DNA of 64,000 nt, taken from assembly GCA_965285935.1 (NCBI GenBank), contig OZ260661.1, positions 133,672,001-133,736,000 of the forward strand, given 5' to 3'. This document shows, piece by piece, positions 1 to 63,941 of this stretch (positions are counted from its first letter, which is position 1; every line of letters begins with the position of its first letter). Below the pieces are notes generated by a model that saw only the letters and a program-made list of their open reading frames with translations, ran no database searches and was not told the DNA's origin. A program made the position numbers and the translations under genes. Origin of the DNA: Ophelia neglecta (Eukaryota).

Positions 1-1479
1 TTGATTAATTGGAAAATTTGCTCATTTTCAGATTTTAAGCCGAAATTCGAGGAGCGAGTTCAAATTGTATTTCTCTCAAAGTTTCGGACACTTCTGTTTA
101 ATACCATAGCTGACCGAGATGTAAACAGTTCGCTCCTTTCACGCTAGGAGCGTGGCACGCTTTGTTCTAGTATAAATCGATATCCTTTACTACTGCCTGC
201 CGTTTGCTTCTGTGGCACAGGCGAAAAGACGCCCGATCCTAACACTCGCCACTTTCTTTCCTCGCGGGATCGAGTCCCACCGAAGCCGGCATATATTTTG
301 CGCTAATTGGACATTTATATTTTGCTTTATCACATGTTTTCACAAAGTACGACTTAATAAATTAAGCTATGTTCCGTGTCAGCTTGTTTCAATTACATGA
401 CAAAGGCAAAGAATAGACCTCGCCGTTCTACGGCCTACTTGGTACTCAACATGGCCACAGGGGTCGCCTGGAACTTCACGTTCGTTGCATTACGATTATA
501 TACGAATGGGCTTCCTATGATTATATAATTAATTTTTTTCCACCGTGGTCGATTTTTGATTTATGATGAGTCTACCCATTTTCCTTGCCCTCGCCTTTTT
601 AACTCGCTCTTCGCCTTTTCATTCTTCCTCTCGCTTTTTCAACTCACTCCTCGCCAGCCGCGCGACCGATTTACACAATCGATTTCTACATAACAAACCT
701 GTAGGCCTTGATAAGGCATTCCAATATGTTTGCCCCTTGTCATTCGAGTGATTATCACCAAAACAAAACGACTGTTGAAATAAGCAACATTGAAATTAGC
801 TTTTAAGCCCATTGGACAGAACAATATAAGCCGACTTTGATTTGTTCACAGGCCAGAAGCTGGAAATATGATCACATGGTTAGGCCTACTGGCAAATAAG
901 ACGGGGAGAGCGAGAAGGGTGGGGGGGGGGGGGTAAATAACAAAAACGTGCATGCGAATTTAACGAAATCTCGGAATTTTGGGTAATATTTAAACACCCG
1001 CCAATCAATTTGGATTAAATATACTGCTCCATATCTCTATTGAATTATTACTAATATTACGTGACATATATTTGTATATAATCATCAAGTAACATTCTAA
1101 GATTAGGGCCTATTGCATGCTTTTAAGTCAATGATTTAGCCTTATGCGTATATTCCTATACGAATAATAAATAACTTAGGGTATGAAAGACGGGACTACC
1201 GCTAGATCAACCCCCCCCCCCTCCCCCTCCCCGCTCATTACACGTCCGGAACCAGATCGAACACGATTCATTGCAGTGCGCCTGCTGCGAAATCCTCTTT
1301 TATCGCATTAGTATCAAAGACGATTACGATCCAGCTCGTCACAGTGTGCGCAGGTAACCCAGCAATATGCCGGCCGAGAGTACAAATAGCGGAGCGGGGG
1401 CTAGAACCGCCACACTTTGATTAAGGCGAGAGACTCAGACGCTTGCAGCCGTCACACGAAAGCCATTACACCCGGCAAC

Positions 1480-2703
1480 ATGAAGTCACTAGTATTTATC
1501 GTGCTCGCAGCCTGCATTGCATGTAAGTAATTTACTTCATGCAAACTTCAATCTTAACTTTTTCATTTTGAAAATATTCGGGTGAAATTAACCTGGCAGC
1601 TAAACGGGTTGGCTATCTGTAGTATATTTATCTTTGTAATATTTTTTTTAACTATTTGCAAGCACTTTAAAACGATACCTTTTGCTAAACTATTGTAGTT
1701 TTCAAAATATGAGTTACTTTTGGTAGAGCCATATTGGTTTCAGGCATGATTGTCGAATCTGTTTAAAACAAACTTGCACGGTATGTTGGCCATTTTTTCC
1801 CTAACGTATTGGCTAGACGTTATGAACGCGTGAAAGATAAAAGAGCGCTTGTCATGCCGAACGTTTGCCACACATGTTACTTCATGGTGAAAAACTTTAA
1901 GGAGGTTCCGTTATGTTTATGGCACTAGCTTTGGTCTTGTTTCTCATACAGACGGCATTTATTTCGTACCTACAGCTTTAATAATTAAACCTCTATTGTT
2001 TCAAGTCGGGTTATTTCTTTCGTCGTTTACTTTCGCGCAACAAATATCCTTATTTCACGTTCAACCGTAACGTGCGCGGAATAATGCTATTTAGCGCGCG
2101 GAATAAGAGTACCTGCTGCGCGGATTGACATAATAGGTAAACCTGGACTTCACACTGCAAAGTACCAGTTTACTTACTGCGTGAAATTATATGTGTGCAA
2201 AGTTAATGCATGCGCGTAAGCCTGATGCATTCTATATTCAGTGTTCTATTTTCGGCCAGTTGTATTCAATAATCGTATGTGCCGGGACTGACCACGGGAG
2301 ACTGCAATGAGCTTTACCAGCAACAATTGTATACATATCTCATACTATATTGTGTTGCGCCTATGAGCATTTTGGAATAGGCGCATTTTAGAAATGAATT
2401 TTAATAATAATTACAGAACACTTACAAATTAACCCCAACATTATTTAAATTACATAATTGTGGAACATCTAAAAACTACTGTGCTATACCTATTTTCAAA
2501 GACATTGTATATATGTATATGTAATTCATTTATTTTTTCTTATAGTGTATGTCAGTCCGATAGAGGGCGGCACCACGACGGAATCCATGACGACCACCGG
2601 CACCCCAGCGGACGTCACGATCCCGGACAACGGCGCAAGCGCATTGAGTGTTCTCACCCCATTGACCCTGCTCCTAATGGCGGCCGCCAAGTTGCTGGCT
2701 TAA
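1480..2703 (+). CDS. Small secreted, predicted GPI-anchored Thr-rich peptide (66 aa, 2 exons)
   Basis: Exon 1 1480-1522 (ATG...GCA T|gtaagt) joins exon 2 2546-2703 (tttcttatag|TG...TAA) in phase 1. Product: MKSLVFIVLAACIALYVSPIEGGTTTESMTTTGTPADVTIPDNGASALSVLTPLTLLLMAAAKLLA. It has an N-terminal signal peptide, an N-G-A omega-like site and a hydrophobic C-terminus; AATAAA at ~3031. Confidence 0.85.
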
Positions 2704-3640
2704 AAGTTTTATGACACATTGTACCTTATTTATTAAACCCCGACACACTTACAAATGACGGGTTAGACTTGTTGGATTTGTTCCGGAATGGACAGCGCGG
2801 TGGAAACGTTCAACTATAATCATTTAGTGAACAATTTGTAACTGCACTCCATTAGCTGAATAAGTGGTGTTGTATTACGAACAATATGTGAACAGTTTGT
2901 CAAATTCCGTCCATTCACACCGTGAATAAGTTGTTTAGTGAATATAATCACTGTGAACTTCATGGCCTGTGTTAACAAAGGATAAAACGACTAAGTCACC
3001 ATTGTGTGTTTGTTCTGTGATATCTTCTTGAATAAAGTCTTTTTACATTAAAATACCCGTGATAATAGTTTTTTTCTGTTTAGGAGTTCTGCACATAAAA
3101 TAGTACAATTATATACATTTATTTTTAAATCTCTATCGCCGGCACTGCTTTGCCTACAGGTACGTACACTTATTCTTTATTTTGCAGGAAGTTAAAATAT
3201 AATACTATCAAACACCAGATTCTTAATATCCATTAATCGGCAGCTATCTTTATAGCAAACTAGTTTGAAGCAAATCCTTGGAAAATAAAAATCCTTGGAC
3301 AATATGCCTGCCATTGATTGAGTTTATAGTCGACTCGTATGTCGATGGCACTTCATTTATAAGCCCGTCTAGTACGGAGGATTTCGTCCAAATAGTGCAT
3401 TTAATCACAGGCATTTAAACTCCAGATATGTTGACCCAAATGTCCTAACTCTTTTCAGACATGGAGGCTATGGCAACGGCACATTCTATTTTTTCAATAT
3501 TGAAATTGGGCAACAATTGTTAACTTTGTTCTGGAATGAAAATGAAGGATGTTTAGTGTAATTGCTTAGGTACATACCATATTAAAAGCATGCAGCACTT
3601 CAGAAATGGTCGCAAGAACAACAAAAGCGTTACTATACTA

Positions 3641-4987: not shown

Positions 4988-7900
4988 ATGGCGGAAAGTT
5001 TACACACCCTTTCTGCATCCTTATTACTGTATTTTTCATGGATTTTATTTGTACCAACATCAGGTAATTTGTTTTAAAAGCATACGATATGCATACACGG
5101 TCAGAGCTTTTATATACCTATCTTATCAGCTATTAGGTGTAAACGCCTACACTGTATAATTTATATCATACACAATTATGTACGTTAGGTGATTGAAAAT
5201 AGTATTGCAGGTGCAGTTTGTGATCCAGAATGGCAACAATACCATGCAAGTTGCTATTTTAAGTCCACTAGGGAAACATCATGGGTTGAAGCCAGATATT
5301 TGTGTATGAACATGGACTCCAATCTCGTATCTATCACAGACCAAGAAGAAAATGACTTTATCAGGCGTACATTGTAAGTGACATTTCATACTACAGTTTT
5401 ACATGTACGAACTTTTTGTATAAGTAGACTTTTAAACAACTGTAGAGAAAACCGTACTATCGTGGATATCAATATGAAGGCTTCACACATACAAAACTTA
5501 GATCTTATACAATAATTTGCATCGAAATATATTGTTTATACCTTGACCAGACTTTTAAGGCTGAAATTGTAACATACAAGTAGTAGTACTAGTAGTAGTA
5601 TCACATGCATGGCTAGAACAATAAGGTGAGTACGTATATATATACAGGGAACCTGCGTTTGTGGTGATCTGTGTATAAGATCACCTGCCCACCAAGGTCA
5701 CTAAATGTTAGGCCAATCCCCATTTATGCCTGTGTTAACCGCCTATTAAGGCAAACTACATAATGTGGTTATTCCAATCCCTTACGTGACCTGACTAGAC
5801 AGGTTTCAATGTATTACTTCACAGTATATAGACTGTGACGCCAACTGACAGGCAGGTGAAAACGCTGTCGAGCAATTGTAAATCATCGAAGGAATGTCCA
5901 TCAACGCTGCTATGATCATGCAAATGAGCAAACGCCGATCTCGCAAGTAGCTTTTGGTTTTATGAACGGAAAATGATTCCTTATCATGGGAGAACTTTTA
6001 GTATCCTTGCAATGTATTCACATCGTTTGTATCCAGGGAGCTTTTTATGCTAAATTAGGGCATTGACTGCCTGTTTTGAATTTGGTGTTATATCAAGAAC
6101 AAAAACGGGAACTTTGTTCTAGCGATTTCTTCTAGAACCGTGTTATAAGTATAAATATAACAATTATTTAAATATCATATCTTCTTATAAAATTAGCCTA
6201 AGCCTGCCGATATCCCCACTTTTATCGTCCCGCCATGACATTCAGATAATAATGATGTGTTAAATGGCATGGCTGCAATGCATGTTTTCTTTATTCCATT
6301 TTACCCCAGTTTATTCAAAAATTGCGATTACTGCCCATTTAAAGACGTTGTCGATCATCTATGTTGTTAGCAGGTTATAGTAACTGAGATTTTAGCTACA
6401 TTAGATTTTGCTTGGTATATGAATAAGAAAGAAACGCCTGTCGGGATTACATTTTAGTGTTGGTATATTTTATAAATTTTAATTCCCCAACCAGTAGTCG
6501 GTATGCACGGCTTCCTGCAAAGAAGTGTTTATTAATGGTTTACACCAACCTATTTGCATCGGGTTATCATGTTACGGGTGGGTTAAGGGTTTGACAAGTG
6601 TGTCAGGGTTCGGTTCAGCAAGGGAACGAGTATTATATTGCCATTGTAAATTGCTACATTTTTTAAAGCGTTAACACAGAAATAGTAGTTTACAACTGTT
6701 AGTCCACTGCCGATAATATACATACCGTCATTGTCCTAAAATATTCACATGTATAACACTCCTTTAGTCGTTTTTATGTAAGACATATGTTGATTTCAGT
6801 GTTGAAATATGCACCGTTAGCACAGAATGTAAAGAACAAACACAAGATGCATGGATTGGATTGTCGAAAATGACAGACCTGTCCGGAAATGTGACACAAC
6901 GACGAATGGACTGGAAATGGGTGGATGGATCCAAATACCAATGGTCTAACTGGGATGGCAGAGCCCCAGTCCCGGATGTGAGGCGTGAACCAGCGGCATT
7001 CTCAGGGAAAGCCCGAATGCAGTACGATGGGAAATGGGCTGACAAGACCCCGAATAACATCAGGTTCATCTGTGAGAAAGAAGGTAACATCATAATTAGT
7101 TATTCTGTGTTATTGTGGTGATTTAACAATGTAACAATAATCGTATCTATTTTTTGATGATCCGAATCAGTTTTGAATAAAGGAGCAACCCAATTCCAGT
7201 TTACCAAACAAGATTTGTTTTATCGTGGAAGTTCTGATGAGACAGCAAAAGTGATGATATTGTGGTAAAAGTGATACATAACCGATGATCTATTTAAAAA
7301 AAATATTTCAGAAATCTGTTCATCTGCACGACGTGTTTTATTTATGGTCTGAAGGCTAAAAAACACGACCGAGACGATAGTACCTTGCATTATACTCTAA
7401 ATTCATGACCTTGGGTATGAAGTGGGCCACTGGTTCATTAAAAGCGCTAGAAGGCTTGCTACCTCACGTTTAAGCGGCAAAGACCAATTCAGATTACCTA
7501 AAAATGGGGATTAAGGGATCTCTTAATATTTGAAGGCAATGAAACTTTTCACTGGAGAAATCTTGTGTAATTCTCCCCGGCCTTGATCTTTTAACAGATC
7601 GAGGAGAATGGTTTTAATTTCGTATGACATTGTAAGCTGTCACAAAATAAACAATTAAAGGTGATGGGATATATCAAAGAAGGTGGTCTTAAGATTGCAA
7701 TATTACACTGCATGATATACGTCCAGACGATAAAGCTTTGGCTTGATGCCAATGCCAGAAGTTCCAATATAAAAATGTCGACCGAATATTTCCATGTCCA
7801 GTGGAAAGATTTACATGAAAATTAGTATACAATCATTTATACGGAGATTGTAAAAAAAGTAGATACTATTTTTATTATTAGTTCACATATTCGCAATTAT

Positions 7901-9251
7901 TGGAAAAAAGAAACTCATTTATAAAACTCGTGTTAAATAAAGAGGACCTTCGCTTTCTGTTCTGCTTGGTATCATAAAGGCTGAAAATTTTTTTTTTGAG
8001 CAACTTAGGTGCTATAATCATATCCAAATCATTTTTTTTTGAAAAAGTTGAAGATTCTATGGTAAAAACTATGCCAATAAGTTTATAGGACAAGGGCCTA
8101 CTCGAAAACCTGTCGAGAGATAAATTTGAACATAGTTGGGTGACATATGGCACGCTTTTAGCGGACAAGAATGGTAATCAGTATGCGACCAATCCGCTGT
8201 TTGTTCTTTCGGTCTCTTTTGCATTTTCAACTTGTGTATTGTATTGTATGTATATATTTGTGTTTAAATAAATAGTTGAAGATGAAAAAATGTATGATGG
8301 ACAATAGATTCATTTGTTAGGTTATAAAATTTACTTGTTGTTTTAAATTATAATAGTAGTAAGATGCAAACGGTTTGCGTCATATTTCGAATTTTAGAGA
8401 CATTGCAGTTATTTCCTTTACTTCGCCAGTGATACAAAACATTTCTATGAACCAGCAATACGAACAACAGTCCGGTATTTAGGCATATAAGAATACATAT
8501 GACTTCCATCACTGCAAACATTATAGGGGAAGTCATAATTAATAAAATAGTTATAATACGTGTTCAATATTTTCAGCTGGGACAAATGTGATGTATCCTC
8601 TGACCCTGACATTTCCGTTTAGTGATGTTACCACACAAAATAATTTGGACCCAGGGCAGTCATCAGTGACTAAAATAGTAACAGAGGATGGCGTAAATTG
8701 TGAGTTTATGTCCAAATAATGCTTTAAAACAGATATTACTTATTTGTCCATGCGTAATTTAATTGAATTAATTAGTTAATAAATGCCATTTTTAATAATG
8801 TCCTATTTTCAGTTTTGATTGTAGTAAGCGTGGCGTTGATTATCATAGGAGTAGTGTTGGCTGTCATGATTGGATTAGGGGTCTGGACGTTAAGGTGAGA
8901 TGCATAAATAGATAGTAAGCAAATCAAACTACATCTCGAATATAAAGCACACATTGTAAATATATTATATTTTTGTGCCTCTCCATCAGAAGAATGAAAA
9001 CACAGAAGGCAGCAGAAAGAAAAGCAGACGAACAAAACTTCTATAACACTGCAGTAGAAAGGAACCAATCAGGTGAAAGTCAAGCCCCTAACAACTACCA
9101 CAATGTAGGAAAGAAGGAACTCTCGTCACACGCGAATACTGACGAAATGAAAAACTACCACGAGAAAGGCATATACGAGGAGCTCCAGGTGAAAGACACT
9201 GGTATGAAATCGGATAGTGATTATGAACGATTAAGCACGTTCGGTATTTAA
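4988..9251 (+). CDS. CTLR1: type I transmembrane C-type lectin-like receptor (329 aa, 6 exons)
   Basis: Exons 4988-5063 (signal), 5211-5373 (CDPEW..SCY..SW.EA..C...LVSI..EENDFI), 6800-7083 (WIGL..W.DGS..W..EP..WAD..FICEK), 8577-8699 (stalk), 8813-8894 (TM FLIVVSVALIIIGVVLAVMIGLGVW), 8990-9251 (tail). All introns are GT-AG, phases are compatible, and the 990 nt are open. Confidence 0.9.
5643..5813. mobile_element. Degenerate Tc1/mariner-pogo-type MITE in CTLR1 intron 2 (paralogous copy 35641-35812)
   Basis: Termini tacagggaacctg...caggtttcaatgta resemble the TACAGTGAAACCTG MITE family at 55.5 and 61.9-62.7 kb. Confidence 0.55.
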
Positions 9252-11991: not shown

Positions 11992-14900
11992 ATGGCGGAA
12001 GGTTCACATACATTTTATGTATTCATATTACTGTATTTGTCATGGAGTATATTTGTGCCAATATCAGGTAATATATCCTCCCAATTATGACATATTCATA
12101 CTTTGTCCGAGCTACCATTTTAACATGTAATATATATATATATTGGTTAAAAAGTTTACATTGTATATCAATTTAAATTGCAATATTGTAAGACTAGTGA
12201 ATGAAAATTATATCACAGGAGCAGTTTGTGATCCAGAATGGTATCCACACAATATGAATTGTTATTATAAGTCCATCAACTTTACATCATGGATGGAAGC
12301 AAACGATATATGCAACACAATGGACTCTCATCTTGTTTCTATAACAGACCCTGAAGAAAATCAATTCATCCGAGACACATTGTGAGTAGTAGTCCACATG
12401 GCATTTTTCTAGATATTACCTTCAATTTGAAAATATATTGCTTATCAGCTACCGATCATCAATATAATGTAAAAGTACGATACCATTGTTTGAATCAATG
12501 AGAGTGTCAAATTAGCTCGCATAATTAGATAACTGAGGCCGAGGAGGATTGCAGCTACAGTCTTGGAATTTCTTGTAAGGTATGAAAACATTTGTTTGAA
12601 TTGAATATTCTTTTTATCACCAAGTTGATGTCCCAAAATAATAAAATTATTTTTACAGTCAAATAAAAAATATAAAGTAGCATGTCGTAAGTAAACATAA
12701 ATGTAATATATGTCAATAAACAAAGTCATAAAAAACAGAAGCACATACGAGGAAAAATCTAGTGTTATTAAATTTAGTGATATATTGTTGATTAACAATT
12801 GTAAGTTTGTTAATATTTAAGGAACTGAGAACTTGTATGTATACACATCCGGTTTATAACTCCCCCTCACCCCCACTCCACTACTAGTAATAAACTCCCA
12901 AATATTGCAGAGAAAGTTTTGTGTTGGAAATTTTTTTTTAGGGGGGGGGGGGGTGTATATTTGCACAGTTATTGAGTGTCGTAAATGAGCAATATACCAA
13001 GTTATATAAGTAATACATACTGCCGAGCAAAGGTAGAGGGCAGTAATTCCCGTTGCCTCGCGATAGCAAACTTTGGAGGAAAACGTTGTCTCAGTGTGAA
13101 AACGCTGACCCGTTTAAAGAGCGTGCTCAAGCGCTATTTTAATTAACCCATGCCACGCAACGTACTTATATAATACCACATTTAAAATTACCAATGAATT
13201 AGTTCAGTTTGAATGTGACATTTTAATCGATGCTGCCCGTTGCATTGGCATCGGTTTAGATATTGCCATGCGCCATTGCACTTAACACCTGATACTGCCT
13301 CTTGCCTTTGTTCTTATCATATGATATTGCTTTTAGCCTTATTTTCTAATATATAATACTGCCTTTTGCCTTTGTACTAAACTTTCTATAACACACGGCA
13401 GTGTCATGTGTACTGAAACTAGGTTAAAAATAAAAATTTGATGTTTTTTTTACTTTTCAGATTATTGGAATCTGGTATAGAAAATTAAATATGTCAAGGC
13501 TGGATATGATTCAATTCACGAATAAGGGGCGGTTTTGCTGTAGCTCAGCGCTGTTTGCCACTGAATGACTGATTTGCCCTTTCTTGACCTGTCCTATATC
13601 TTACCATTTTTCACTTATGTCGTTCAATTGATTTAACGTGTATCGAGTGTGTCCAAACTCTATCCACCTGTCTGTAGTTTTTTGTTGAAAGCATTTATCG
13701 AATTTTATTAATACAGCATCGAGTGTGATATAGCGCAAGGGTGCCACGAACAAAATCATCAGTATTGGATCGGTCTGCAGAAAAATTCTGGTGGATCAGG
13801 AAATCTTACAACTAGGCGTAGCGATTGGAAATGGCAGGATGGTTCTCAATATGGATGGTGGAATTGGAAAACAAATGGAACAATGGCTGAGCAAGAGCCA
13901 AAAGGCCGCAGTGGAAAGGCGCGAATAACATACAATGGTTATTGGGCTGATGATGATAAACTTGATAACGGACGGATCAGGTTTATTTGTGAAATGCCAG
14001 GTACGTTTTAGAGTTCACATGAATGCATCGGTTTAAGTAGTCTCAGCCTGTCGGTCAACAAACAGCTTTTATTCTCTGTTCAATTACTCTTTTAACGGTT
14101 GCTCGATTCAATGTGTGTGATTATTTGTTTCTTTCTTTTCTACTGGAATTTACCCCCCCCCCCCTTATACCGCTTTCCTTCCGAACACTTGGAACCACTA
14201 GGAGGTTATCCTTGGCCCCTATTTTGTTCGTATAATCGCGTTCTGTTTCGAGAGATTACTTTATTGGTGACATAATACCACTCACATTATAATGGGTCAA
14301 TGCAAATATTGATGGGTTATTCGATATGACCTTTGATGAAAACAAATTAGTGCATGACATTGCACATCGTCACCTATACTCTCTCTATACCAAGATTCTG
14401 TGAAAAACGTATGCCTATCAGGTTTAGAAAAATACCCGTGTTATACAAGGGGACGCATAGCTACTCGAACCAGCCTTATCGCAATAAACAGATGGTGGTT
14501 TTAAGCTTTTATATCCCTGTTGACCCATTCAATCGGACAACATTTATTATTTCATTAAATGGATAACGCCATGAACTAATATATATTAATAACTACTCTT
14601 CAATGTTTGTTTAAGGTTTTAAATGAATGTACTCCTGTCTAATAGATCGACATTTTCCACCAGATAAGTCCACTGAAACGACCGCAAATACCCAGAGCAC
14701 AACCCTGGGTACACATGACATACCTGTGACTAACAGTGGTTTGGACGAAATAACTTATTCAGGGACAAACATGAAAGATGATGCAGGTTAAATGTCTTAC
14801 ATTCATTATCATTCCACTGCCATTTAATGTTATCCCCTGTTGCTTTATTTGAATTAAATAATACCAAAACTAATCACCGGCGACATGTTGTTCAAATGTA

Positions 14901-21459: not shown

Positions 21460-24400
21460 ATGGCGGAACGTTCACATACATTTTATGTATTCATATTACT
21501 GTATTTGTCATGGAGTATATTTGTGCCGATATCAGGTAATATATCCTCCCAATTATGATATATTAATACTTCGTCCGAGCTACAAATATTACATGTGATA
21601 TATATCTTTGTGAAAAAGTTTACATTGTATATCAATTTACATTGCAATATTGTACGTTTAGTGAATGAAAATTATATCACAGGAGCAGTTTGTGATCCAG
21701 AATGGTATCCACACAAAATGAATTGTTATCATAAGTCCAGCAACTTTACATCATGGTGGAAAGCCAACGATATATGTAACATAATGGACTCCCATCTTGT
21801 TTCTATAACAGACCCAGAAGAAAATCAATTCATCCGAGACACATTGTGAGTAGTAGTCCACATGGCATTTTTCTATGGAAATATATTGCTTATCAGGTAC
21901 CGATTTTCAATATCATGTAAAAATGCGATACCTTGTGTGAAATCAATGAGTGTCAAATTAGCTCGCATAATTAAATAACTGGGGTGGTAGGTGGATTGCA
22001 GTTACAGACTTGGAATTTCTTGAAATGTATGAAAACATTTGTTTGAATTGAATATTCTTTATTACCAAGTTGATGTCCAAAAATAAAAATAAAATTATTT
22101 TTACGGTCAAATAAGAAAGATAAAGTAACATGTCGTAAGTAAACATAAATGTGTTTAATACATGTCAATAAACAAAGTCATAAAGGACAGAAGCAAATAC
22201 GAGGAAAAATCTAGTATTATCAATTCTAGCGATATATTGTTAAATACCTATTGTAAGTTTGTTTATAATAAGGAACTGAGAACTTGTATGTATACACATG
22301 CGGTTTATGACTCCCCCTCACCCCCACTCCACTTCTAGTAATAAACTCCCAAGTATTGCAGAGAAAGTTTTGTGTTGGAAATTTTTGTTGGGGGGATGTA
22401 TATATGCACAGTTATCGTGTGTCGTAAATGAGCAATATACCAAATATTAAAACCCCTCCCCGCCCCCTAAAAGTTCCTTATTTTAATGGGCCGGATTGCA
22501 TTACACTACAGTGTTTGAACCTACGCATTTGCACTTTGCGATTATGCTTTGATTCTGAATTAAAGACATCCTGGGAAAAGGGGGCGAATATATTGGCCTA
22601 CGGTCTGAACGGTCGGTTTTTCAGAGGCGGAATTAACATTCAGGGAGTCCATTTTAGTATCACACAAGAAATAAAAGAAGGTTCAACAGAAAGACTTCAG
22701 ATGGGCCCTTGTAAGAATGGCCCCACGAGAGGGAAGTCAAACAGTTCCAGTCTGGAGAGGTTTAAAACAAAGCTTCGGGAATGCACTGATCCAACCAAGA
22801 GTGTCATTGGATACTGCCCAGTTATTAATGCCTCACCTACAGATTTGTCCACAGTTTACACCTTGCTGAAACCGTCGGTGGAAATGGCACAAAAAGCTTG
22901 GTCAAACAAAAACCATTATAGTTTTTGACCAGGCAATCTATGCATAGGAATTAGTTATTTTGAGAAATCCTCAACAATTTTGTTCAGTCGTTTTGAGGGT
23001 TGCGGTTTCCATATAGGTCTCACGTTCCTGGCAGTTATTAGCAAACGGTTTGGCACTGCAGGATTATCAGACCTTAGGAGACAATCAGAACTTGGAAGTT
23101 TGGGATCAACCAATGGTGTTATAGTTTTTTTTATTGACCTCCGCTTTCCGGAGAGCTTAAGGTGGTACATATAACATAACGTGTTTAACATTATTAGGCA
23201 ATGAACAATATGGTAGGTGTGAGGTTACATATTCAAACGTACAGGAATATAAAATAGGATATTAATTTAGTACAACCTCGAATCAAGGAGCTGTCACATG
23301 AGTATAGTGGTCTCTTTAACCCTGCTAGTAGGCCTAGGCCTATACATTATATTTTTATAGACGAGCCATACCACCTACGGGAATACATAGAGAAGAGGGT
23401 ACCGAGAATTAGCTCTGTCCCCTTAGAACCAGAAATGACCATGGCAAGGAAAGCTAGAGTCAACATGTCGTAAGGTGCGCAGGGATCTATCGCATGGTCT
23501 CTTAGGTACTGTATGAGCGTGTCTCTGCTAGATCCTGTCTCCTGGCACACCCACAAGAGATGGGAGAGAGTGTCACCAGCTTCACCACATGTCGGACAGA
23601 CATCCCCAGTATTTGTCTGCACATGTCTCACTGTATGCTCGTAGAGGCCTGACGTCTTAGTGGTAAGGGCCATCACTATTTGTGCTCCTTTTATCTGCCT
23701 CATTGTTTTGGCGATTTTCCACATGCCTATTAGTTCATAGTCCGGACAGGAGTCTCTGAAAATATCCAGATTTTGATATGACAGGCATTCCAGTTTCCAA
23801 AGCATAGTCTGACATGTGCGAACGGTATTGCGGGTATGATTCTTCCACATCCCCTTGGACGGTGTTGTTCTTGTGTGCAGCCATGATCTAAGAGTGTCCT
23901 CCAAGCCGTACTTCACATAGGTATCTACCATGACACCTGATGTGCTCTCAATTGCTTCAATGCCGACAATGTCCCACTCGGTTAGTGCGCGAATGACCAA
24001 TGACCGGTAGATTGAGCTAGCAGGGAGAGCCAGCAGATCTCTCATTAATCTCAAGCGTCTGAGGTCAATGTAGTTTTCCACCGACCACCATCCCAGGGGA
24101 GCCAGGGCAGCAGGGTTCGCTGTGTGTCTCGGAAGACCTTGTATGCGTTTAGCTAATTGTCTGTGTTCAGTTTCAAGGCACATGATATGTTTTCTAGAGA
24201 GATGAATCACCTCTAGGCCGTACAGCATTCCAGGGACAACAATAGCCCAGTAAAGTCTGGAGAGAAGGGGTGTATTGTACCGACTCACTGCCTTGCCAAC
24301 GCCTAGCAGAGAATTCATTGATTTCTTTCCTCTATCTACGCGCTCTCTGAGGGCTGCTTGTTTCAGGCTTCCTGGTGGGCATAGAGGTACGCCGAGGTGT

Positions 24401-27400
24401 GATGTAGCTTGCTTCTGTGGGATGCTTTCACTACCCAGCATATATTGTACTGGTCTCGTTTCTTCTTTGCCGAACACCAATAATTCACACTTAGAAGCGT
24501 TAAAAGTCAGTTTCCATCTAGTGCCATACGAATAGGCCATCTTGCACAGTTCCTGCAAGGTCTTCGCATGTAGGGCTACTATTGTGATGTCATCCGCGTA
24601 GCCCGGGCAGGCGGAGTTTAGGCCGTAGGCAATAGAGCCTAGACCGCTATTCTCTATCAGTTTGAAGAGGCCGTCGTACATGTATGTGAATAGCAGCATG
24701 GAAAGGAGCCCTCCTTGGTGTAGACCTTGGCCGTGTGAATACCACTCTGATGTGCCTCCGGCCACACGAACCGCGCTCTCAAAACGGCGGTACCACGATA
24801 GGAGGATGCTCCATAGTTTCCCTCTAAATCCCAGGTTATAATTTCGGTAGAACAAACCAGAGAACCACACCGTGTCGAAGGCTTTACGAGCATCCAGCAT
24901 AGAGATATACACGGTCTGGCCCCGGGAACGGTGATATTCTATGGCCCCCCGTAAGTGCATTGTTGTATTGAGACTGGAGCAGCCCGCCTGACATGCCGCC
25001 TGCATGGGGCTCACAAGGTGCTTTCCGTCCGCCCATTTAACCATCCTTTGCATGAGCACACCCTCATACAACTTGCAAATGATGGTCAATAGAGTTATTT
25101 TACGGTAACTGTCTTTGAGCGTCGGGTTCTTTCCACCACGTTTATAAAGCGGAATGTCGATTCCCCTTCTAAAGATTACAGGCACATACTCAAGCCTAGT
25201 AATGGCTGTGAATATGAAGGTGAGGATTTCCGCCAGCTCTTTACCGCCGTGTTTGAAGTGTTCGGGAGCAATGTTATCCCACCCGCCAGCCTTACCAGTC
25301 CTTAGCCGTGTGATACAGTGGGCGACCTCATCTTCCGAGATTGGAGGTCCCAGGATGTTATCATCTTGCTGGGGAGAAAGTTGGTCATAAAGCTCGACCC
25401 TAGATTCAATTAGAGAATGAAATGACTGATCAAAGTCCTTGTTTTCCTTGGGTTGACTGAGGTCGAAGAAGTAGTCTCTCCATTCCCTGCGGATATCATC
25501 GGGGTTGGTTACTATCTGGCCACTTTCAGATTGAAGGATAGTGTTTTTGTTTTCATGCCCACTTTGGCGGCGATTATTCACAAGGCGCCAGAAAAAATTT
25601 CGGTCTACGTCGTTAGTGCGAAGGATATCCTCCTGTTCTTTTTCCTCGCTCTCGTGATCGGCGCAGCGTCTCTCTCTTCTATATAGTCGTTTGCTCTCCT
25701 CGAAGAACGCCAATACGAGCCCACAAAATGCCGATAGAAGGTATGCAGCGACTTAAATGGCACTCGATGTTTGGCTCTCTGCTCGGGAGCAACAGTATGA
25801 AATGAATACCAAGGTTGTAAATAATCTACCAGCTGATAGCTCATACATCTCTGTTCCAAAAGATGTGCAACAGGACCTACAGGTGGTACAACAAAAAGGA
25901 AATTAAATGTTTGCCAGCTTCGTTCAGCCCTGATTAGTAAATGAATGGGTCAGTTTCTTTGACAAGATTCCTGAATTGAACTCAAGAGTTTCAACGATGT
26001 CATAAAAATATAACATGTCAAGCACAACAATCAGGTTTTTATCCTCAATGTTGATCCTAGTCTATCTGCTCGGTTAGTCATTATGGCTCAAAACCGAAAA
26101 TGAACTTGAAGCCTATCATACGGACTTTGACCACTTCCGTGGTCGCTTGCAACTGTCGACGGGGGCAATCCAAAACAAACAAGGCGACATTTGAAAACTT
26201 AGATTTAATAAGTTGAATATGTTCGAACCACCGAAGTTCGGATTAATAATTACACCAAGGAATCTTTTCAATCGTTCTCCACTGATACAAACATCACAAG
26301 AAGAAACAGTACGTCGATAATCAATGCAAATACAATATATTGAGGTGTTTTAACATAGAGTTGTATTGAGTTGAGTTGTTTGGGTTTTTACGTGGCTTTC
26401 AACACTTATCGGTCATATCGCCACGGTGCCTACTTGTGACAGTGGGCTCAATGCCCTCTTTAGAGTACTGCCTCACTGGAGTACCTGCCGTAGACACTAG
26501 CCAGGGAACCCCACCCAGTCACATTATACTGTGTAGCCCAGTCCTGATACTACCCCCGAAATACCGGGCGCCTAGCAGGGGAGCTATCAGTACCTATTTT
26601 TGGGTCTAGGGTTTGGAGCGATCGAGATTTGAACCCCGATCTCCCACTTGCGAGGCGGACGCTCTTACCACTCGGCCACGCATTGGTGTCATTCAAGAAG
26701 ATTACCATGTTCTACATTCAGAGTTTCAATCAACGCATCCAAATTTTTATCAATAACAAAAACCTTTGTATTATCGGTAACAAGTACAGGAAATAAGAAC
26801 GATTATAAATTAATCATATCGTTAATATATAAAAGAAATAGTTAAGGCCCCAGAAGCGACCCAGGTAGTACACCGCAGGAAATAGGTCTGCTCTCGGAGG
26901 TAGTTTTGAGATAAGACTCATATTAGGATCAAATGATCGAATAATAACTGAGCCATGCCTGAGCAACTCCCCTTATTCTATATTTATTAACAGTGTTGAA
27001 TGGTTTCGAAAAATCTCAAAAATACCACAAGGACCATGTCTACATCCATTTGAAATTTTGTCAAGAAGAATGAAATTTTTACTGCAATTAATAAATTGGT
27101 GATTATTTAAGATCTAACAAACGGCGTGACTTCACACTGTCTCTACTACCTTATTCACTGCCGATTACCCTTAACTGTACACATTGTAAGACTGGCTATA
27201 AATTACAATGCGATGGGAAATAACGCCCTGTTAGAAGGACTTTTAGCAGAGGATAATTGTATAGACTTAAAGTCACGGGGTAAATAGAAAGTGGCGCCGG
27301 TCCATACATCTTAAAGTGGGTGACTAGGGTATATCTGAATACGTGTTTCCTTACTTATAGTATACAGGAGAAACACAATCGAGAAATCAAATAGCAATAT

Positions 27401-34986: not shown

Positions 34987-37107
34987 ATGGCGGAAAGTTC
35001 ACACACCCTTTCTGCATCCATATTACTGTATTTTTCATGGATTTTATTCGTACCACCATCAGGTATTTGTCTTAACATCATACGATATGCATACACCGTC
35101 AGAGCTTTCATATACCTATCTTATCAGCTATTAGGTGTATACGCCTACACTGTATAATTTATATCATACACAATTATGTACGTTAGGTAATTGACAATAG
35201 TATTGCAGGTGCAGTTTGTGATCCAGCATGGCAACAATACCATGCAAGTTGCTATTTTAAGTCCACTAGGGAAACATCATGGGTTGATGCCAGAGATTTG
35301 TGTATGAACATGGACTCCCATCTCGTATCTATCACAGACCAAGAAGAAAATGACTTTATCAGGCGTACGTTGTGAGTGACATTTCATACTACAGTTTTAC
35401 ATGTACGAACTTTTTGTATAAGTAGACTTTTAAACAACTGTAGAGAAAACCGTACTATCGTGGAAATCAAGATGAAGGCTTGACACATACAAAACTTCGA
35501 TCTTATACAATAATTTGCATCGAAATATATTGTTTATACCTTGACCAGACTTTTAAGGCTGAAATTGTAACATACAAGTAGTAGTACTAGTAGTAGTATC
35601 ACATGCATGGCTAGAACAATAAGATGAGTACGTATATATATACAGGGAACCTGCGTTTGTGGTGATCTGTGTAATAAGGTCACCTGCCCACCAAAGTCAC
35701 TAAATATTAGCCCAATCCTCATTTATGCCTGTGTTAACCGCCCATTAAGGCAAACTACATAATGTGGTTATTCCAAACTATTGCGTGACCTGACTAGACA
35801 GGTTTCAATGTATTACTTCACAGTATATAGACTGTGACGCCAACTGACAGGCAGGTGAAAACGCTGTCGAGCAATTGTAAATCATCGAAGGAATGTCCAT
35901 CAATGCTGCTATGAATATGCAAATGAGCAAACGCCGATCTCGCAAGTAGCTTTTGGTTTTATGAACGGAAAATGATTCCTTATCATGGGAGAACTTTTAG
36001 TATCCTTGCAATGTATTCACATCGTTTGTATCAAGGGAGCTTTTTATGCTAAATTAGGGCATTTACTGCCTGTTTTGAATTTGGTGTTATATCAAGAACA
36101 AAAATGGGAACTTTGTTCTAGCGATTTCTTCTAGAACCGTGTTATAAGTATAAATATAACAATTATTTAAATATCATATCTTCTTATAAAATTGGCATAA
36201 GCCTGCCGATATCCCCAATTTTATCGTCCCGCCATGACATTCAGATAATAATGAGGTGTTAAATGTCATGGCTGCAATGCATGTTTACTTTATTCCATTT
36301 TACCCCAGTTTATTCAAAAAACGCGATTACTGTCTATTTAAAGACGTTGCAGATCATCTATGTTGTTAGCAGGTTATAGTAACTGAGATTTTAGCTACAT
36401 TAGATTTTGCTTGGTATATGAATAAGACAGAAACGCCTGTCTGGATTACATTATTTGTGTTGGTATGTTAAATAAATTTAAATATTAATCTTTTTAAATC
36501 CCAAACCCGTAGTGCATTATGCACGGCTTCCTGCACAGAACACACATATTTATCAATGGTTTACACCAACCCGTCTATTTGCATCGGGTTTTCATGTTAC
36601 GGGTGTGTTAAGGGCTTGACAAGTATATTAGGGTTCGGTTCCGCAAGGGAACGAGTACTATATTGCCATTGTAAATTGCTACATTTTTTAAGCGTCAACA
36701 CAGAAATAGTAATTTACAACTGTATGTCCACTGCCGATAATATACATACTGTCATTGTCCTATAATATACACATTTATAACACTCCTTTGGTCTTTTTTA
36801 TGTATGACATATGTTGATTCCAGTGTCGAAATATGCACCGTTAGCACAGAATGTAAAGAACAAACACAAGATGCATGGATTGGATTGTCGAAAATGACAG
36901 ACATGTCCGGAAATGTGACACAACGACGAATGGACTGGATATGGGTGGATGGATCCAAATACCAATGGTCTAACTGAGATGGTAGTGCCCCAGTCCCGGA
37001 TGTCAGGCGTGAACCAACGGCATTCACAGAGAAAGCCCGAACACAGTACGATGGGAAATGGGCTGCCATGACCCCAAATAACATCAGGTTTATCTGTGAG
37101 AAAGTAG
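34987..37107 (+). pseudogene. CTLR4: truncated pseudogene copy of CTLR1
   Basis: Exons 34987-35062, 35209-35371 and 36824-37107 and their introns are nearly identical to CTLR1. TGG>TGA nonsense change at 36975-36977. Homology ends at ~37620 and no stalk, TM or tail exons follow. Confidence 0.88.
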
Positions 37108-38725
37108 GTAACCTCATAATTAGCTATTCAGTGTTACCATAGTGCTTTAATGCTGACCTGAGTGGCAAGTTAACAACAATCGTATCTATTGGCTAATGGA
37201 AAGACCCAATTCTGGTTTAGCAAACAAGATTTGTTTAATCGTGAAAAATCTTATGAAGAAGCAAAATTGATGAAATTGTGGTAATAATTATACACAACAA
37301 CACAGAAAGGGCCGATGATTTTTAAATATAGTGGCAAGATCAAATTCCTTGCAGAAAGCTTTTAATCTGCACGAAGAGCTTTATGTATGATCTAAACTTA
37401 GGGTAAAAAGGAACATGACCGAGGCTTATAAAACCATACTTCGCCAATGATACAAATTCGCCTATGATACAAAGTCTGTGTTGTTATGTACAGTATTTTC
37501 AACTTGTGTATTATTGCATGTATATATTTGTGTTCAAATAAATGGTTGAGTTGAAAAACTTGTATGGTGGACAATAAATTCATTGGTTAGGATATAACAT
37601 TTACTTGTAGTTTTAAATAGTAAAAGAGAAGGCATCAGAAAGATTCCTGCCCCGAATCTATAGGTAAGTTATTGGTATCTCGTATAACGTGTCACATATC
37701 TGCAATTGTGTAACAGCTTTGTCTATATAACTACATTGAAAAAGCGTAGGCATTGGTCCTCCATTATTGATGCTGGTAAGCTGTCCATGATTTATTCTAT
37801 GTATCTTATAAATCGTGAAGCGTCTGCTCAAAACATTGCCATTCGTTTCTCACAGGCGAGCTGAATGAATATGTCTATACGTTAAAATTCATGTTGTACC
37901 TTGAGCCTCAAACGGCATCCCAGACGCATACCCGCCTTACAAGTCTTATATTTGTAAACTTCTGTGGAAAGTTAATACTGTGTCCATTAGCTCGTGTAAT
38001 TTCGTCAATATATTATTATATACTGTTATTTGCGCCAATTTTAATTGATTGTAACCTACATTCACCACCAGGTGAGTGAGTTGACGGATCACGTAGGACG
38101 AACGACAACAGATGTCGCCTTTTTATGAGAAATGGGACTTTTTTCCTGCCTTTTTTAATCTCTTTCCCAGCGTGTAGTCCTAGCCGCCAGTCCAACCGTG
38201 ACGACACATACACTAACACAAGAGTGATTTATTTCCCTTTTTCCGTCTAGGGCGCAATACATCATGAACAATAATTATTCGAATTTATTGTCGATGTTGT
38301 CTAAGGTATGTTGTGTAATGTGTTCCAAGAAGGTTGCAGGTTGGACAATCTTGTAACGTAATTTGTTCACTCCAATACAAACTTGTCAAGGGCCCCATGT
38401 ATGATTTGGCGGTCTGCTGAGTTGAATATTAATAGGGTGTACTAATAAATTGAGATAAGCCTAAGGTGTTCACGCTTATTGGTTTACACATTATTTCATT
38501 CCTTAAACGCCACTGAATTTCAGTCAGCGGCCAAAATGCATAGTTCACTTGAAAGCAACAAGCACAAGATGTTAATCAGAGCATGAACATATTATAGCAA
38601 TATCTATACTCCAAGTGGTTCAGGTGAAACGTTGATTGTTACGCGGAAGCCGAGATAGACTGATTTAACACACTATTTCACTTCCTTGTATGCGCTGGAA
38701 TTCATATAGTCATGTGAAGTCTATC

Positions 38726-63235: not shown

Positions 63236-63941
63236 CTAGAATCCGTTGAAGGAGCTGTCTGAGTCTGAGTCATTTAATAACAACTCCACATCCCGATCGT
63301 CAGCACATGCTAAATCGTCGTAATACGACTCGTGTGCGTTGGGTTGGGCTTCGGCAGGCTCAGCGGCCTCCAGGGGGGTGTCCTCCCATAGGATGTCGTC
63401 CTCGGTTCCATCATTGCATTCGAAATGCAACATTTTTTAAAGCCGTTTACGATGATCTAGGGATCCAGCTCTTGCCAAGGGTCCACGATCCATTGACAAA
63501 TAGTGTTCATCTCCACTTTCTGTTGACGACCAGTGGCAGGGAAAGTGTGTTGTCCGCCAATCATCCACTCGTTCCACTTCTTGGTGAGTAGAACCTTGAA
63601 TGGGCGGTTCACAGAGACGTCGAGGGGCTGAAGATGCGAAGTCATACCGCCTGGTATAATGACAAGGTCAGTGCGTAGCTCCTTGAGTTGGGCTTTGACA
63701 GCACCTTGTGTGCTCTGAAACTGTCCAGCACCAACATACGACGACGGAGGAAGCCACGGCTGGCCCATACGGAGCGCAGCCAGTCCGCTGTAAGTTTCTC
63801 GTCCATCCACCCCTTTGCTTGGACGCGGACGATGACTCCAGGTGAAAAATCCAGCTTGGGCATTGTTTTCCACTTAAATATAACGTAGGGGGGCAACTTC
63901 GTTCCGTCAGCGAGGCAAGCCAACATGACCGTACCTCTCAA
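63236..63941 (-). mobile_element. Frameshifted pogo-family (DDE_1) transposase relic
   Basis: TVMLACLADGTKLPPYVIFK..KGWMD..LVLDSFRAH, then after a frameshift IIPGGMTSHLQPLDVSVNRPFK, then an acidic tail DGTEDDILWE. Confidence 0.9.

What the first reader, a model, noticed from the sequence alone, without database searches (positions are those of the whole stretch)
1480..2703. Hidden CD24/CD52-like micro-protein next to the lectin receptor array
Seen: a two-exon 66-aa ORF absent from the ORF track. After removing the predicted signal peptide and GPI signal only ~21 residues remain (GTTTESMTTTGTPADVTIPDN), 9 of them Thr/Ser. Known: CD24 and CD52 are two-exon, tiny, heavily glycosylated GPI peptides that act as self ligands for inhibitory lectin receptors (Siglec-10). 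Inference: an architectural analogue, not a demonstrated homologue, and possibly a linked self-marker ligand for the adjacent CTLRs.
Basis: partly seen in the sequence, partly recalled or inferred. Interest (0 to 1): 0.8.

Follow-up and report, generated by a model that had tools for sequence, protein, structure and literature searches.

The report
Tandem orphan GPI-type Thr-rich micro-protein gene
The two-exon 66-codon gene is real in the sequence and is kept intact in six copies, so it probably encodes a tiny sugar-coated, lipid-anchored surface peptide, but nothing shows that it is related to CD24/CD52 or that it is a ligand of the neighbouring lectin-like receptors.

Summary
Exon 1 (1480-1522), a GTAAGT...TTATAG intron and exon 2 (2546-2703) give a 66-codon ORF: a hydrophobic N-terminus, a 21-residue Thr-rich acidic core and a GPI-type tail.

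It is more than a chance ORF.
- The genome holds exactly six copies, as two collinear blocks of three tandem genes. All six keep the ATG, both splice sites, the split codon and the stop.
- Between the most diverged copies the exons differ by 3% and the intron by 24% (Fisher 5e-15).
- Changes fall 11:5:1 on codon positions 3:1:2, with 9 synonymous and 8 non-synonymous.
- Conservation runs from a TATA-like box to a canonical AATAAA about 330 nt past the stop.
- Exon 2 has GC3 0.76, against 0.28-0.46 in neighbouring genes.

No relative was found in Pfam, in two very large protein collections, or elsewhere in this genome. No RNA run exists, so splicing and expression are unshown.

The neighbours are type-I C-type-lectin-like receptors, but they lack the canonical Ca2+/sugar-binding residues. 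The only second case of linkage is an internal duplicate of the whole block.

Verdict: a probable lineage-specific GPI-anchored mucin-type micro-protein. It resembles CD24/CD52 in architecture but is not a member of either family. The ligand idea is untested. The scan had not noted this before.

The parts
1300..1479 (+). Conserved upstream block: putative core promoter and 5' UTR. It holds a TATA-like TACAAATAG at 1381-1389.
   Evidence: It is 88-100% identical among the three diverged tandem copies, while sequence further upstream falls to 20-75%. The 160 nt spanning it and exon 1 are 95-98% identical in all six copies and occur nowhere else in the genome. The promoter role is inferred.
1480..1522 (+). 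Exon 1 coding part: the ATG, 14 codons of a signal-peptide n- and h-region, and the first base of a split codon (phase 1).
   Evidence: It is present and intact in all six copies. Mean Kyte-Doolittle hydropathy of residues 4-14 is 3.25.
1523..2545 (+). Intron of 1023 nt in this copy (841-1168 nt in the others). The donor is GTAAGTA; the acceptor is a pyrimidine tract followed by TTATAG.
   Evidence: Donor and acceptor are conserved in all six copies. The intron is only 76% identical between copy A1 and copies A2/A3, against 97% for the exons. GC is 0.35.
2546..2703 (+). Exon 2 coding part: the end of the signal peptide, the 21-residue Thr-rich acidic core, the Asp-Asn-Gly-Ala-Ser small-residue omega region, a 20-residue hydrophobic tail, and TAA.
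   Evidence: It is 94-100% identical at protein level in the six copies. GC is 0.62 and GC3 0.76.
2704..3055 (+). Putative 3' UTR, with ATTAAA at 2729-2734 and a canonical AATAAA at 3032-3037.
   Evidence: It is 86-97% conserved among the diverged copies. Conservation falls right after the AATAAA. The poly(A) site is inferred.
4988..9248 (+). Neighbour CTLR1, a type-I C-type-lectin-like receptor. Its own signal-peptide exon is 4988-5063 (phase 1). The CTLD exons are 5211-5374 and 6768-7118, the TM exon 8776-8895, and the cytoplasmic exon 8946-9248 with YEEL-x12-YERL.
   Evidence: Pfam Lectin_C matches on both CTLD exons, open frames, splice sites read by eye, and alignment to solved CTLDs. This is context and not part of the micro gene.

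Best explanation
This is a real, lineage-restricted, two-exon protein-coding gene. It is the third of three tandem copies; the other two lie 5.7 and 10.7 kb upstream of it, just outside the window. The triplet is repeated in a collinear block 444 kb away. The 66-residue precursor would enter the ER through an N-terminal signal peptide, cleaved most likely after residue 22. It would then lose its hydrophobic C-terminal tail in exchange for a GPI anchor at about Asn43/Gly44. That leaves about 21 acidic, Thr-rich residues on the outer cell surface as a scaffold for mucin-type O-glycans: a small glycocalyx peptide. Shown here: the ORF and its signals, six intact copies, constraint on the exons, and a coding-type substitution pattern. 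Inferred: transcription, splicing, signal-peptide cleavage, GPI anchoring, glycosylation and any binding partner.
For: All six copies keep the ATG, donor, acceptor, split codon, frame and stop. Exon against intron differences are 6/201 and 231/945 for A1-A3 (Fisher 5e-15), with similar values for the other diverged pairs. The 17 substitution events in the CDS fall 11:5:1 on codon positions 3:1:2 (chi-square p = 0.011). Nine are synonymous and 8 non-synonymous, where 27% synonymous is expected (binomial p = 0.02). Most replacements are conservative (F/I/L, A/T, S/A, G/A). The conserved blocks coincide with gene signals: a TATA-like box upstream and AATAAA at 3032, where conservation ends. Exon 2 is a GC island (GC3 0.76) in 35% GC surroundings, while the neighbouring genes have GC3 0.28-0.46. 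The N-terminus has one Lys followed by a strongly hydrophobic stretch of 11-12 residues, then Ser-Pro-Ile-Glu-Gly, which fits the -3/-1 rule. The C-terminus has small residues (Asn-Gly-Ala-Ser), a spacer and a hydrophobic tail that runs to the last residue, 23 residues after Asn43. These fit the established rules for signal peptides and GPI signals. The core has 9 Ser/Thr in 21 residues, with Pro nearby.
Against: There is no RNA evidence. The only public runs holding the stretch are DNA-like: their contigs cover the intron and show no 1522/2546 joint. No homologue was found in any other organism, so there is no cross-species test of constraint. Synonymous divergence (0.06-0.11) is well below intron divergence (0.24), and the UTR blocks are as conserved as the CDS. 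Part of the exon conservation could therefore be RNA-level constraint or gene conversion and not protein-level selection. The counts behind pN/pS are small. A Lys sits four residues from the C-terminus, so a transmembrane anchor is an alternative to GPI. SignalP, NetGPI and NetOGlyc could not be run. If block B is an uncollapsed haplotype, there are three genes and not six.
Confidence: 0.55

Rival explanations
1. It is a real gene, but the C-terminal hydrophobic stretch is a transmembrane anchor. The product would be a type-I single-pass micro-membrane protein with a four-residue cytosolic tail (Lys-Leu-Leu-Ala), not a GPI-anchored peptide.
For: A Lys follows about 16 hydrophobic residues near the C-terminus, which fits a positive-inside stop-transfer. 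Mean hydropathy of the last 20 residues is 1.89. All the evidence that the gene is real applies equally.
Against: The hydrophobic stretch is short and only moderately hydrophobic, and Thr and Pro interrupt it. It is preceded at the right distance by a cluster of small residues (Asn-Gly-Ala-Ser) after Pro-Asp, as in GPI signals. Known GPI signals tolerate a charged residue near the end (own knowledge).
Confidence: 0.2
2. It does not code for a protein. The conserved blocks would be exons of a non-coding RNA, regulatory DNA, or young duplicates homogenised by gene conversion, and the 66-codon ORF would be incidental.
For: There is no RNA and no cross-species homologue. The UTR-like blocks are as conserved as the ORF, and synonymous sites diverge less than the intron. 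With only 17 substitution events, an open frame in six young copies is weak evidence by itself. GC-rich exon 2 is also open in a second frame (84-aa ORF).
Against: Changes are concentrated on third codon positions of the proposed frame (11:5:1, p = 0.011). In the other open frame they would fall on first positions. There is an excess of synonymous changes (p = 0.02). The ORF starts and ends inside the two conserved blocks, with the correct splice phase. A signal peptide, a Thr-rich core and a GPI-type tail together in one 66-codon frame is an unlikely accident. GC3 is 0.76.
Confidence: 0.13
3. One reading: the glycopeptide is a genetically linked self-marker ligand of the adjacent lectin-like receptors, working like CD24/CD52 with Siglec-10 or the Clr ligands with NKR-P1.
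For: The gene triplet lies directly upstream of the receptor array on the same strand, in both blocks. The close paralogues of this receptor subfamily occur only in these two arrays. CTLR1 carries tyrosine motifs in its tail. CD24 is known to bind a C-type lectin, P-selectin (PMC7379889).
Against: The two blocks are one duplicated unit, so there is a single observation of linkage. The receptors lack the canonical Ca2+/sugar ligands and the C2/C3 disulfide. The core peptide is nearly invariant while the receptors diverge, so there is no co-variation. There are no expression or binding data. Adjacent genes are usually functionally unrelated.
Confidence: 0.05
4. It is a true but very diverged homologue of vertebrate CD24 or CD52.
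For: The two-exon layout and domain order are the same. The CD24 cluster is the second-nearest named cluster in the language-model search (score 0.79).
Against: No Pfam match, CD24 included, at E up to 10. The score of 0.79 lies in the range that shuffled sequences reach a third of the time. There is no N-glycan sequon. Both families are known only from vertebrates (own knowledge; the Atlas CD24 cluster is almost entirely Chordata). In such short, low-complexity proteins convergence is the default explanation.
Confidence: 0.02

Closest known systems
CD24 (heat-stable antigen; Pfam PF14984)
   Same: It is a two-exon gene encoding a short precursor: a signal peptide, a mature peptide of about 30 residues rich in Ser/Thr that carries mucin-type O-glycans, and a C-terminal GPI signal. 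It acts as a glycan scaffold read by lectins (Siglec-10, P-selectin; PMC7379889, PMC6065011).
   Different: There is no detectable sequence similarity. Here there is no N-glycan sequon. The gene is present as tandem copies in an invertebrate-like genome. Glycosylation, anchoring and lectin binding are unshown.
CD52 (CAMPATH-1 antigen)
   Same: It has a very small GPI-anchored mature peptide (12 residues in human) that serves mainly as a scaffold for a glycan and the anchor. Its gene organisation resembles that of CD24 (PMC6065011).
   Different: CD52 function depends on a sialylated N-glycan. The peptide here has no Asn-X-Ser/Thr sequon and could carry only O-glycans. There is no sequence similarity.
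GPI-anchored Thr-rich mucins of trypanosomatids (for example the T. cruzi TcMUC family; own knowledge)
   Same: They have a signal peptide, a Thr-rich O-glycosylated core and a GPI signal, and are encoded by multi-copy tandem gene families.
   Different: They come from an unrelated lineage. Their cores are much longer and repetitive, and their families are very large and variable. Here there are only six near-identical copies.
NKR-P1 / Clr (CLEC2) linked receptor-ligand pairs of the mammalian NK gene complex (own knowledge)
   Same: This is the precedent for lectin-like receptors whose ligands are encoded next to them.
   Different: Those ligands are themselves C-type-lectin-like proteins, and binding has been shown by experiment. 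Here only adjacency is seen.

Membership tests
CD24 family (Pfam PF14984) | Sequence match to the family profile | tested here: not met
   hmmscan of the exon 2 peptides of three copies against Pfam-A found no CD24 match at E up to 0.1 or 10. The Atlas feature score to the CD24 cluster is 0.79, within noise.
CD24 family (Pfam PF14984) | Two-exon gene with the signal peptide in exon 1 and the mature peptide plus GPI signal in exon 2 | tested here: met
   Exon 1 is 1480-1522 and exon 2 is 2546-2703, with the same structure in all six copies. This layout is not specific to the family.
CD52 family | Mature peptide carrying the functional N-linked glycan (an Asn-X-Ser/Thr sequon) | tested here: not met
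   The only Asn of the exon 2 peptide is followed by Gly-Ala, so there is no sequon. The requirement for the N-glycan is from PMC6065011.
GPI-anchored proteins (generic class) | N-terminal ER signal peptide | tested here: inconclusive
   The rule-based reading fits: a Lys, then a hydrophobic stretch of 11-12 residues (mean KD 3.25), then Ser-Pro-Ile-Glu-Gly with allowed -3/-1 residues. No trained predictor was available.
GPI-anchored proteins (generic class) | C-terminal signal: small omega, omega+1 and omega+2 residues, a polar spacer, and a hydrophobic tail ending the protein | tested here: inconclusive
   Asn-Gly-Ala(-Ser) is followed by a spacer and a tail that runs to the last residue, 23 residues after Asn43. 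This fits the rules, but a Lys lies at -4 and NetGPI/PredGPI were not available.
GPI-anchored proteins (generic class) | Lipid anchor shown by experiment (PI-PLC release) | not testable with these tools
   Needs bench work.
Mucin-type O-glycoproteins | Ser/Thr-rich, Pro-containing, unstructured extracellular segment | tested here: met
   The 21-residue core has 9 Ser/Thr and 2 Pro. Actual glycosylation cannot be tested here.
Canonical Ca2+-dependent C-type lectins (applies to the neighbouring receptors) | EPN or QPD motif, WND motif, and the C2-C3 disulfide | tested here: not met
   All five receptors have WAD (WAA in one) and EP[A/K/T], and lack the C2/C3 cysteines, apart from a lone Cys at the C2 position in CTLR3. 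This is seen in the alignment to CL-P1/SRCL (2ox8, 2ox9). The CTLD fold itself is supported by Pfam Lectin_C matches.

The most novel reading that the evidence does not exclude
An invertebrate 'linked self-marker' cassette. In this reading a tandemly amplified GPI-anchored O-glycopeptide is the cis-encoded ligand of the adjacent, fast-evolving, tyrosine-motif-bearing C-type-lectin-like receptors. That would be a missing-self or self-recognition system assembled independently of the vertebrate CD24-Siglec and NKR-P1-Clr systems.
Probability: 0.04. Interest if true: 0.8.

Novelty: new member of a known kind. Interest (0 to 1): 0.3.

Why it matters
If it is expressed, this is a clean example of a gene that standard ORF and homology pipelines miss: 66 codons in two short exons, with no relatives. 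It belongs to a class, tiny GPI-anchored glycopeptides, whose few known members (CD24, CD52) have large roles in immune regulation. It would add an independently evolved member from an invertebrate-like genome. It would also give a simple, testable candidate partner for an orphan receptor array. On present evidence it is an ordinary lineage-specific small surface-protein gene, and the receptor link is only adjacency.

Tried and rejected
- **RNA evidence.** Laid on 1000-3600, their contigs cover the intron and flanks and show no 1522/2546 joint, so they are genomic DNA and say nothing about expression.
- **Homologues.** A word-indexed search of 5.8 billion proteins with exon 2 found nothing. 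A profile search of 1.84 billion representatives, using the six exon 2 peptides, gave five hits. All are proteins of more than 1000 residues matched over many repeats. The two inspected by BLASTP are LRR-like and other tandem repeats. I rejected all five as compositional or repeat artefacts.
- **Pfam.** There was no meaningful match. The only match was a sub-threshold one to a tryptophan-operon membrane family, on the hydrophobic tail of one copy. I rejected it.
- **Further paralogues.** Protein and DNA searches of the whole genome found only the six copies and no intronless retrocopy.
- **Shared signal-peptide exon.** I asked whether exon 1 really belongs to the downstream receptor. CTLR1 has its own signal-peptide exon at 4988-5063. 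Copies A1 and A2 have no lectin exon before the next micro gene. I rejected this as the main reading, although the splice phases (both 1) would allow such a splice.
- **The 84-aa ORF in the other frame of exon 2.** Rejected on substitution pattern and on the lack of an ATG or a compatible splice phase.
- **Synteny in other species and naming the organism.** The NHL ORF and the CTLD exon found no relatives in the protein collection. Neither question could be pursued.
- **Joined protein.** All searches used exon 2, or the exons separately, by reference.

Full report
**What is in the sequence.**
The window is part of a 762-Mb eukaryotic, invertebrate-like assembly (G000 contig C1, 133,672,001-133,736,000).
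- An ATG at 1480 opens 14 codons: Met-Lys-Ser followed by 11 hydrophobic residues.
- One further base is followed by GTAAGT.
- At 2545 a pyrimidine tract ends in TTATAG.
- The split codon T|TG (Leu) is followed by 51 codons and TAA (2701-2703).
- Unspliced, the frame stops two codons into the intron.
- It has no Asn-X-Ser/Thr sequon.

In a mechanical ORF list exon 2 is only a 52-aa GTG ORF, and a different frame gives an 84-aa ORF over the same DNA. That explains why an ORF track hid the gene.

**Is it more than chance?**
A six-frame search of the whole genome with the exon 2 peptide found exactly six places, at 94-100% identity. A DNA search with the 160 nt around exon 1 found the same six and nothing else. 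The copies form two blocks of three tandem genes on the + strand:
- A1 at 133,662,822, A2 at 133,667,797 and A3, which is this finding, at 133,673,480.
- B1, B2 and B3 at 133,218,164, 133,223,166 and 133,230,666.

All six keep the ATG, the donor GTAAGTA, the acceptor TTCTTATAG, the split codon, the frame and the TAA. Intron length varies from 841 to 1168 nt.

Between the diverged lineages the exons are far better kept than the intron:

| Pair | Exon differences | Intron differences | Fisher p |
|---|---|---|---|
| A1-A3 | 6/201 | 231/945 | 5e-15 |
| A1-A2 | 8/201 | 183/755 | 9e-13 |
| B1-B3 | 7/201 | 226/935 | 9e-14 |

A 60-nt conservation profile of A1/A2/A3 shows two peaks. One covers 1300-1540, which is a TATA-like TACAAATAG at 1381, the putative 5' UTR and exon 1. 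The other covers 2560-3040, which is exon 2 plus about 340 nt. That peak ends at a canonical AATAAA at 3032-3037. The conserved blocks therefore have the shape of a small two-exon mRNA of roughly 600 nt.

**Coding or not?**
- The 17 minimum substitution events in the coding part fall 11:5:1 on codon positions 3:1:2 (chi-square p = 0.011).
- Nine are synonymous and eight are not, where 27% synonymous sites are expected (binomial p = 0.02). Pairwise pN/pS is about 0.3.
- Most replacements are conservative: Phe/Ile/Leu in the signal peptide, Ser/Ala in the core, Thr/Ala in the tail. One copy (B2) has Ser-Ala changed to Arg-Thr just after the proposed omega site.
- In the rival 84-aa frame the same changes would fall mainly on first positions. 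That frame has no ATG and no compatible splice phase, so I reject it.
- Exon 2 is a GC island (GC 0.62, GC3 0.76). The intron has GC 0.35, and the exons of the neighbouring receptor genes have GC3 0.28-0.46.

There are caveats. The counts are small. Synonymous divergence (0.06-0.11) is lower than intron divergence (0.24), and the UTR blocks are as conserved as the CDS. RNA-level constraint or gene conversion may therefore add to the signal.

**Expression.**
This could not be tested. Their contigs lie across the intron and flanks, and no joint 1522-2546 appears. They are genomic DNA. No intronless retrocopy exists in the genome.

**Relatives.**
- Exon 2 found nothing among 5.8 billion clustered proteins.
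- A profile of the six exon 2 peptides against 1.84 billion representatives gave five hits.
- All five are proteins of 1076-2916 residues matched over 3-10 repeat units. The two I aligned are an LRR-like protein and a tandem-repeat protein. They are artefacts of repetition and composition.
- Pfam gave no meaningful match at E up to 10. The CD24 family was not among the matches.
- A language-model feature search put the CD24 cluster fourth overall and second among named clusters. Its score of 0.79 is one that shuffled proteins often reach, so it echoes the architecture and shows no kinship.

All searches were exon by exon and by reference.

**Predicted product (inferred from established rules, not from trained predictors).**
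- The N-terminus has the n/h/c layout of a signal peptide. The best -3/-1 site is after Ile-Glu-Gly (residue 22), and a second possibility is after Cys-Ile-Ala (residue 14).
- The C-terminus has Pro-Asp-Asn-Gly-Ala-Ser, a cluster of small residues suited to an omega site at Asn43 or Gly44.
- After that come a short spacer and a moderately hydrophobic stretch that runs to the last residue. The mean hydropathy of the last 20 residues is 1.89.
- This fits a GPI-attachment signal. The Lys four residues from the end keeps a transmembrane anchor in play.
- The mature part would be about 21 residues (29 with the earlier cleavage site). It would be acidic and Thr-rich, with Pro near several Thr, which suits mucin-type O-glycosylation.

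**Surroundings.**
Downstream on the same strand lie five genes for type-I membrane proteins with a C-type-lectin-like domain.
- CTLR1 has its own signal-peptide exon (4988-5063, phase 1), CTLD exons at 5211-5374 and 6768-7118, a TM exon at 8776-8895, and a cytoplasmic exon at 8946-9248 with YEEL-x12-YERL.
- CTLR2 to CTLR5 follow, up to about 43 kb.

So 'next to a lectin receptor array' is correct. But alignment to solved CTLDs (CL-P1/SRCL) shows a non-canonical site in all five:
- WAD (WAA in one) stands in place of WND.
- EP[A/K/T] stands in place of EPN.
- The C2/C3 cysteine pair is missing.
- Two carry an in-frame stop in the second CTLD exon.

These are lectin-like domains without the canonical Ca2+/sugar site. 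That weakens a 'lectin reads the O-glycans' mechanism, though it does not exclude other binding modes.

Upstream of A1 are an integrase fragment and an NHL-repeat ORF on the minus strand.

**Linkage.**
Close paralogues of this receptor subfamily occur only at 133.235-133.325 Mb (beside block B) and 133.678-133.713 Mb (beside block A). More distant CTLD genes elsewhere have no micro gene. However, A and B are collinear over at least 38 kb at 86-98% identity, including the upstream NHL gene. Either one segment was duplicated, or the assembly kept both haplotypes. Either way the linkage has been observed once, not twice.

CTLR1 differs between A and B with pN/pS of about 0.9 (1.4 in the cytoplasmic exon). 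The micro-protein core varies at a single Ser/Ala site across all copies. There is no sign of co-variation. Orthologous loci could not be examined, because neither the CTLD exon nor the NHL ORF found any relative in the protein collection.

**Comparison with what is known.**
CD52 is a GPI-anchored peptide of 12 residues whose sialylated N-glycan engages Siglec-10. CD24 has a similar gene organisation and also engages Siglec-10 (PMC6065011). CD24 carries N- and mucin-type O-glycans and also binds P-selectin (PMC7379889).

The gene here shares the layout: two exons, a signal peptide, a tiny Ser/Thr-rich core and a GPI-type tail. It fails the sequence test for CD24 and lacks the N-glycan sequon that CD52 needs. 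It works like that class at most and is not a member of either family. Siglec-10 is an Ig-type lectin, so the analogy to C-type receptors is loose. The closer precedent for linked lectin-like receptors and ligands is NKR-P1/Clr, where the ligands are themselves CTLD proteins (own knowledge).

**Verdict.**
- The gene is probably real (about 0.85).
- It probably encodes a GPI-anchored O-glycopeptide (about 0.55 for the whole chain of inference).
- It has no known relatives.
- The ligand hypothesis stays a speculation at about 0.05.
- It is a new member of a known kind and of modest interest until RNA, anchoring or binding data exist.

Noticed in passing
window 4988-43000 (+): There is an array of five type-I C-type-lectin-like receptor genes. 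All have WAD/WAA for WND and EP[A/K/T] for EPN, and lack the C2/C3 cysteines. CTLR2 (second CTLD exon, 13748-14029) and CTLR4 (36858-37142) carry an in-frame stop and may be pseudogenes. The CTLR1 tail has YEEL-x12-YERL, an ITAM-like pair with long spacing.
   Followed up: partly
G000:C1:133,202,001-133,242,000 (L013, L008, L011, L009) against 133,646,001-133,684,000: A collinear duplicate of the whole block (NHL ORF, three micro genes, receptor genes) lies 444 kb upstream. It is 86-98% identical, with uneven divergence along its length. Array B has 7 CTLD second-exon matches and array A has 5. Whether it is a true segmental duplication or an uncollapsed haplotype is undecided.
   Followed up: partly
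window 5189-9248 against its block B counterpart: CTLR1 differs between the two blocks with pN/pS of about 0.9 overall and 1.4 in the cytoplasmic exon (18 non-synonymous and 3 synonymous differences). This means relaxed or diversifying evolution, in contrast to the micro gene.
   Followed up: partly
window 2460-2714 (+): An 84-aa GTG ORF in another frame lies over exon 2 and is open in all six copies because the exon is GC-rich. It is probably what an ORF track displays there, and it is not supported by the substitution pattern.
   Followed up: yes
window 700-820: A 120-nt block about 700 nt upstream of the ATG is 87-88% conserved among the three diverged tandem units, while its surroundings are 20-60% conserved. 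It could be an enhancer or a shared repeat fragment. It is unexplained.
   Followed up: no
window 23347-25713 (-), 63457-63873 (-); L007 19-846 (+): Mobile-element ORFs are present: a 788-aa reverse transcriptase (RVT_1) inside the span of CTLR3, a DDE_1 transposase fragment at the end of the window, and an integrase (rve) fragment inserted in block A upstream of the micro genes and absent from block B.
   Followed up: partly
L012 714-2105 (-): A 463-aa single-exon NHL-repeat ORF lies upstream of the micro gene cluster. It has no relative at E 1e-20 among 5.8 billion proteins. The CTLD exon likewise found none at 1e-5. The lineage seems poorly sampled in public protein sets.
   Followed up: partly
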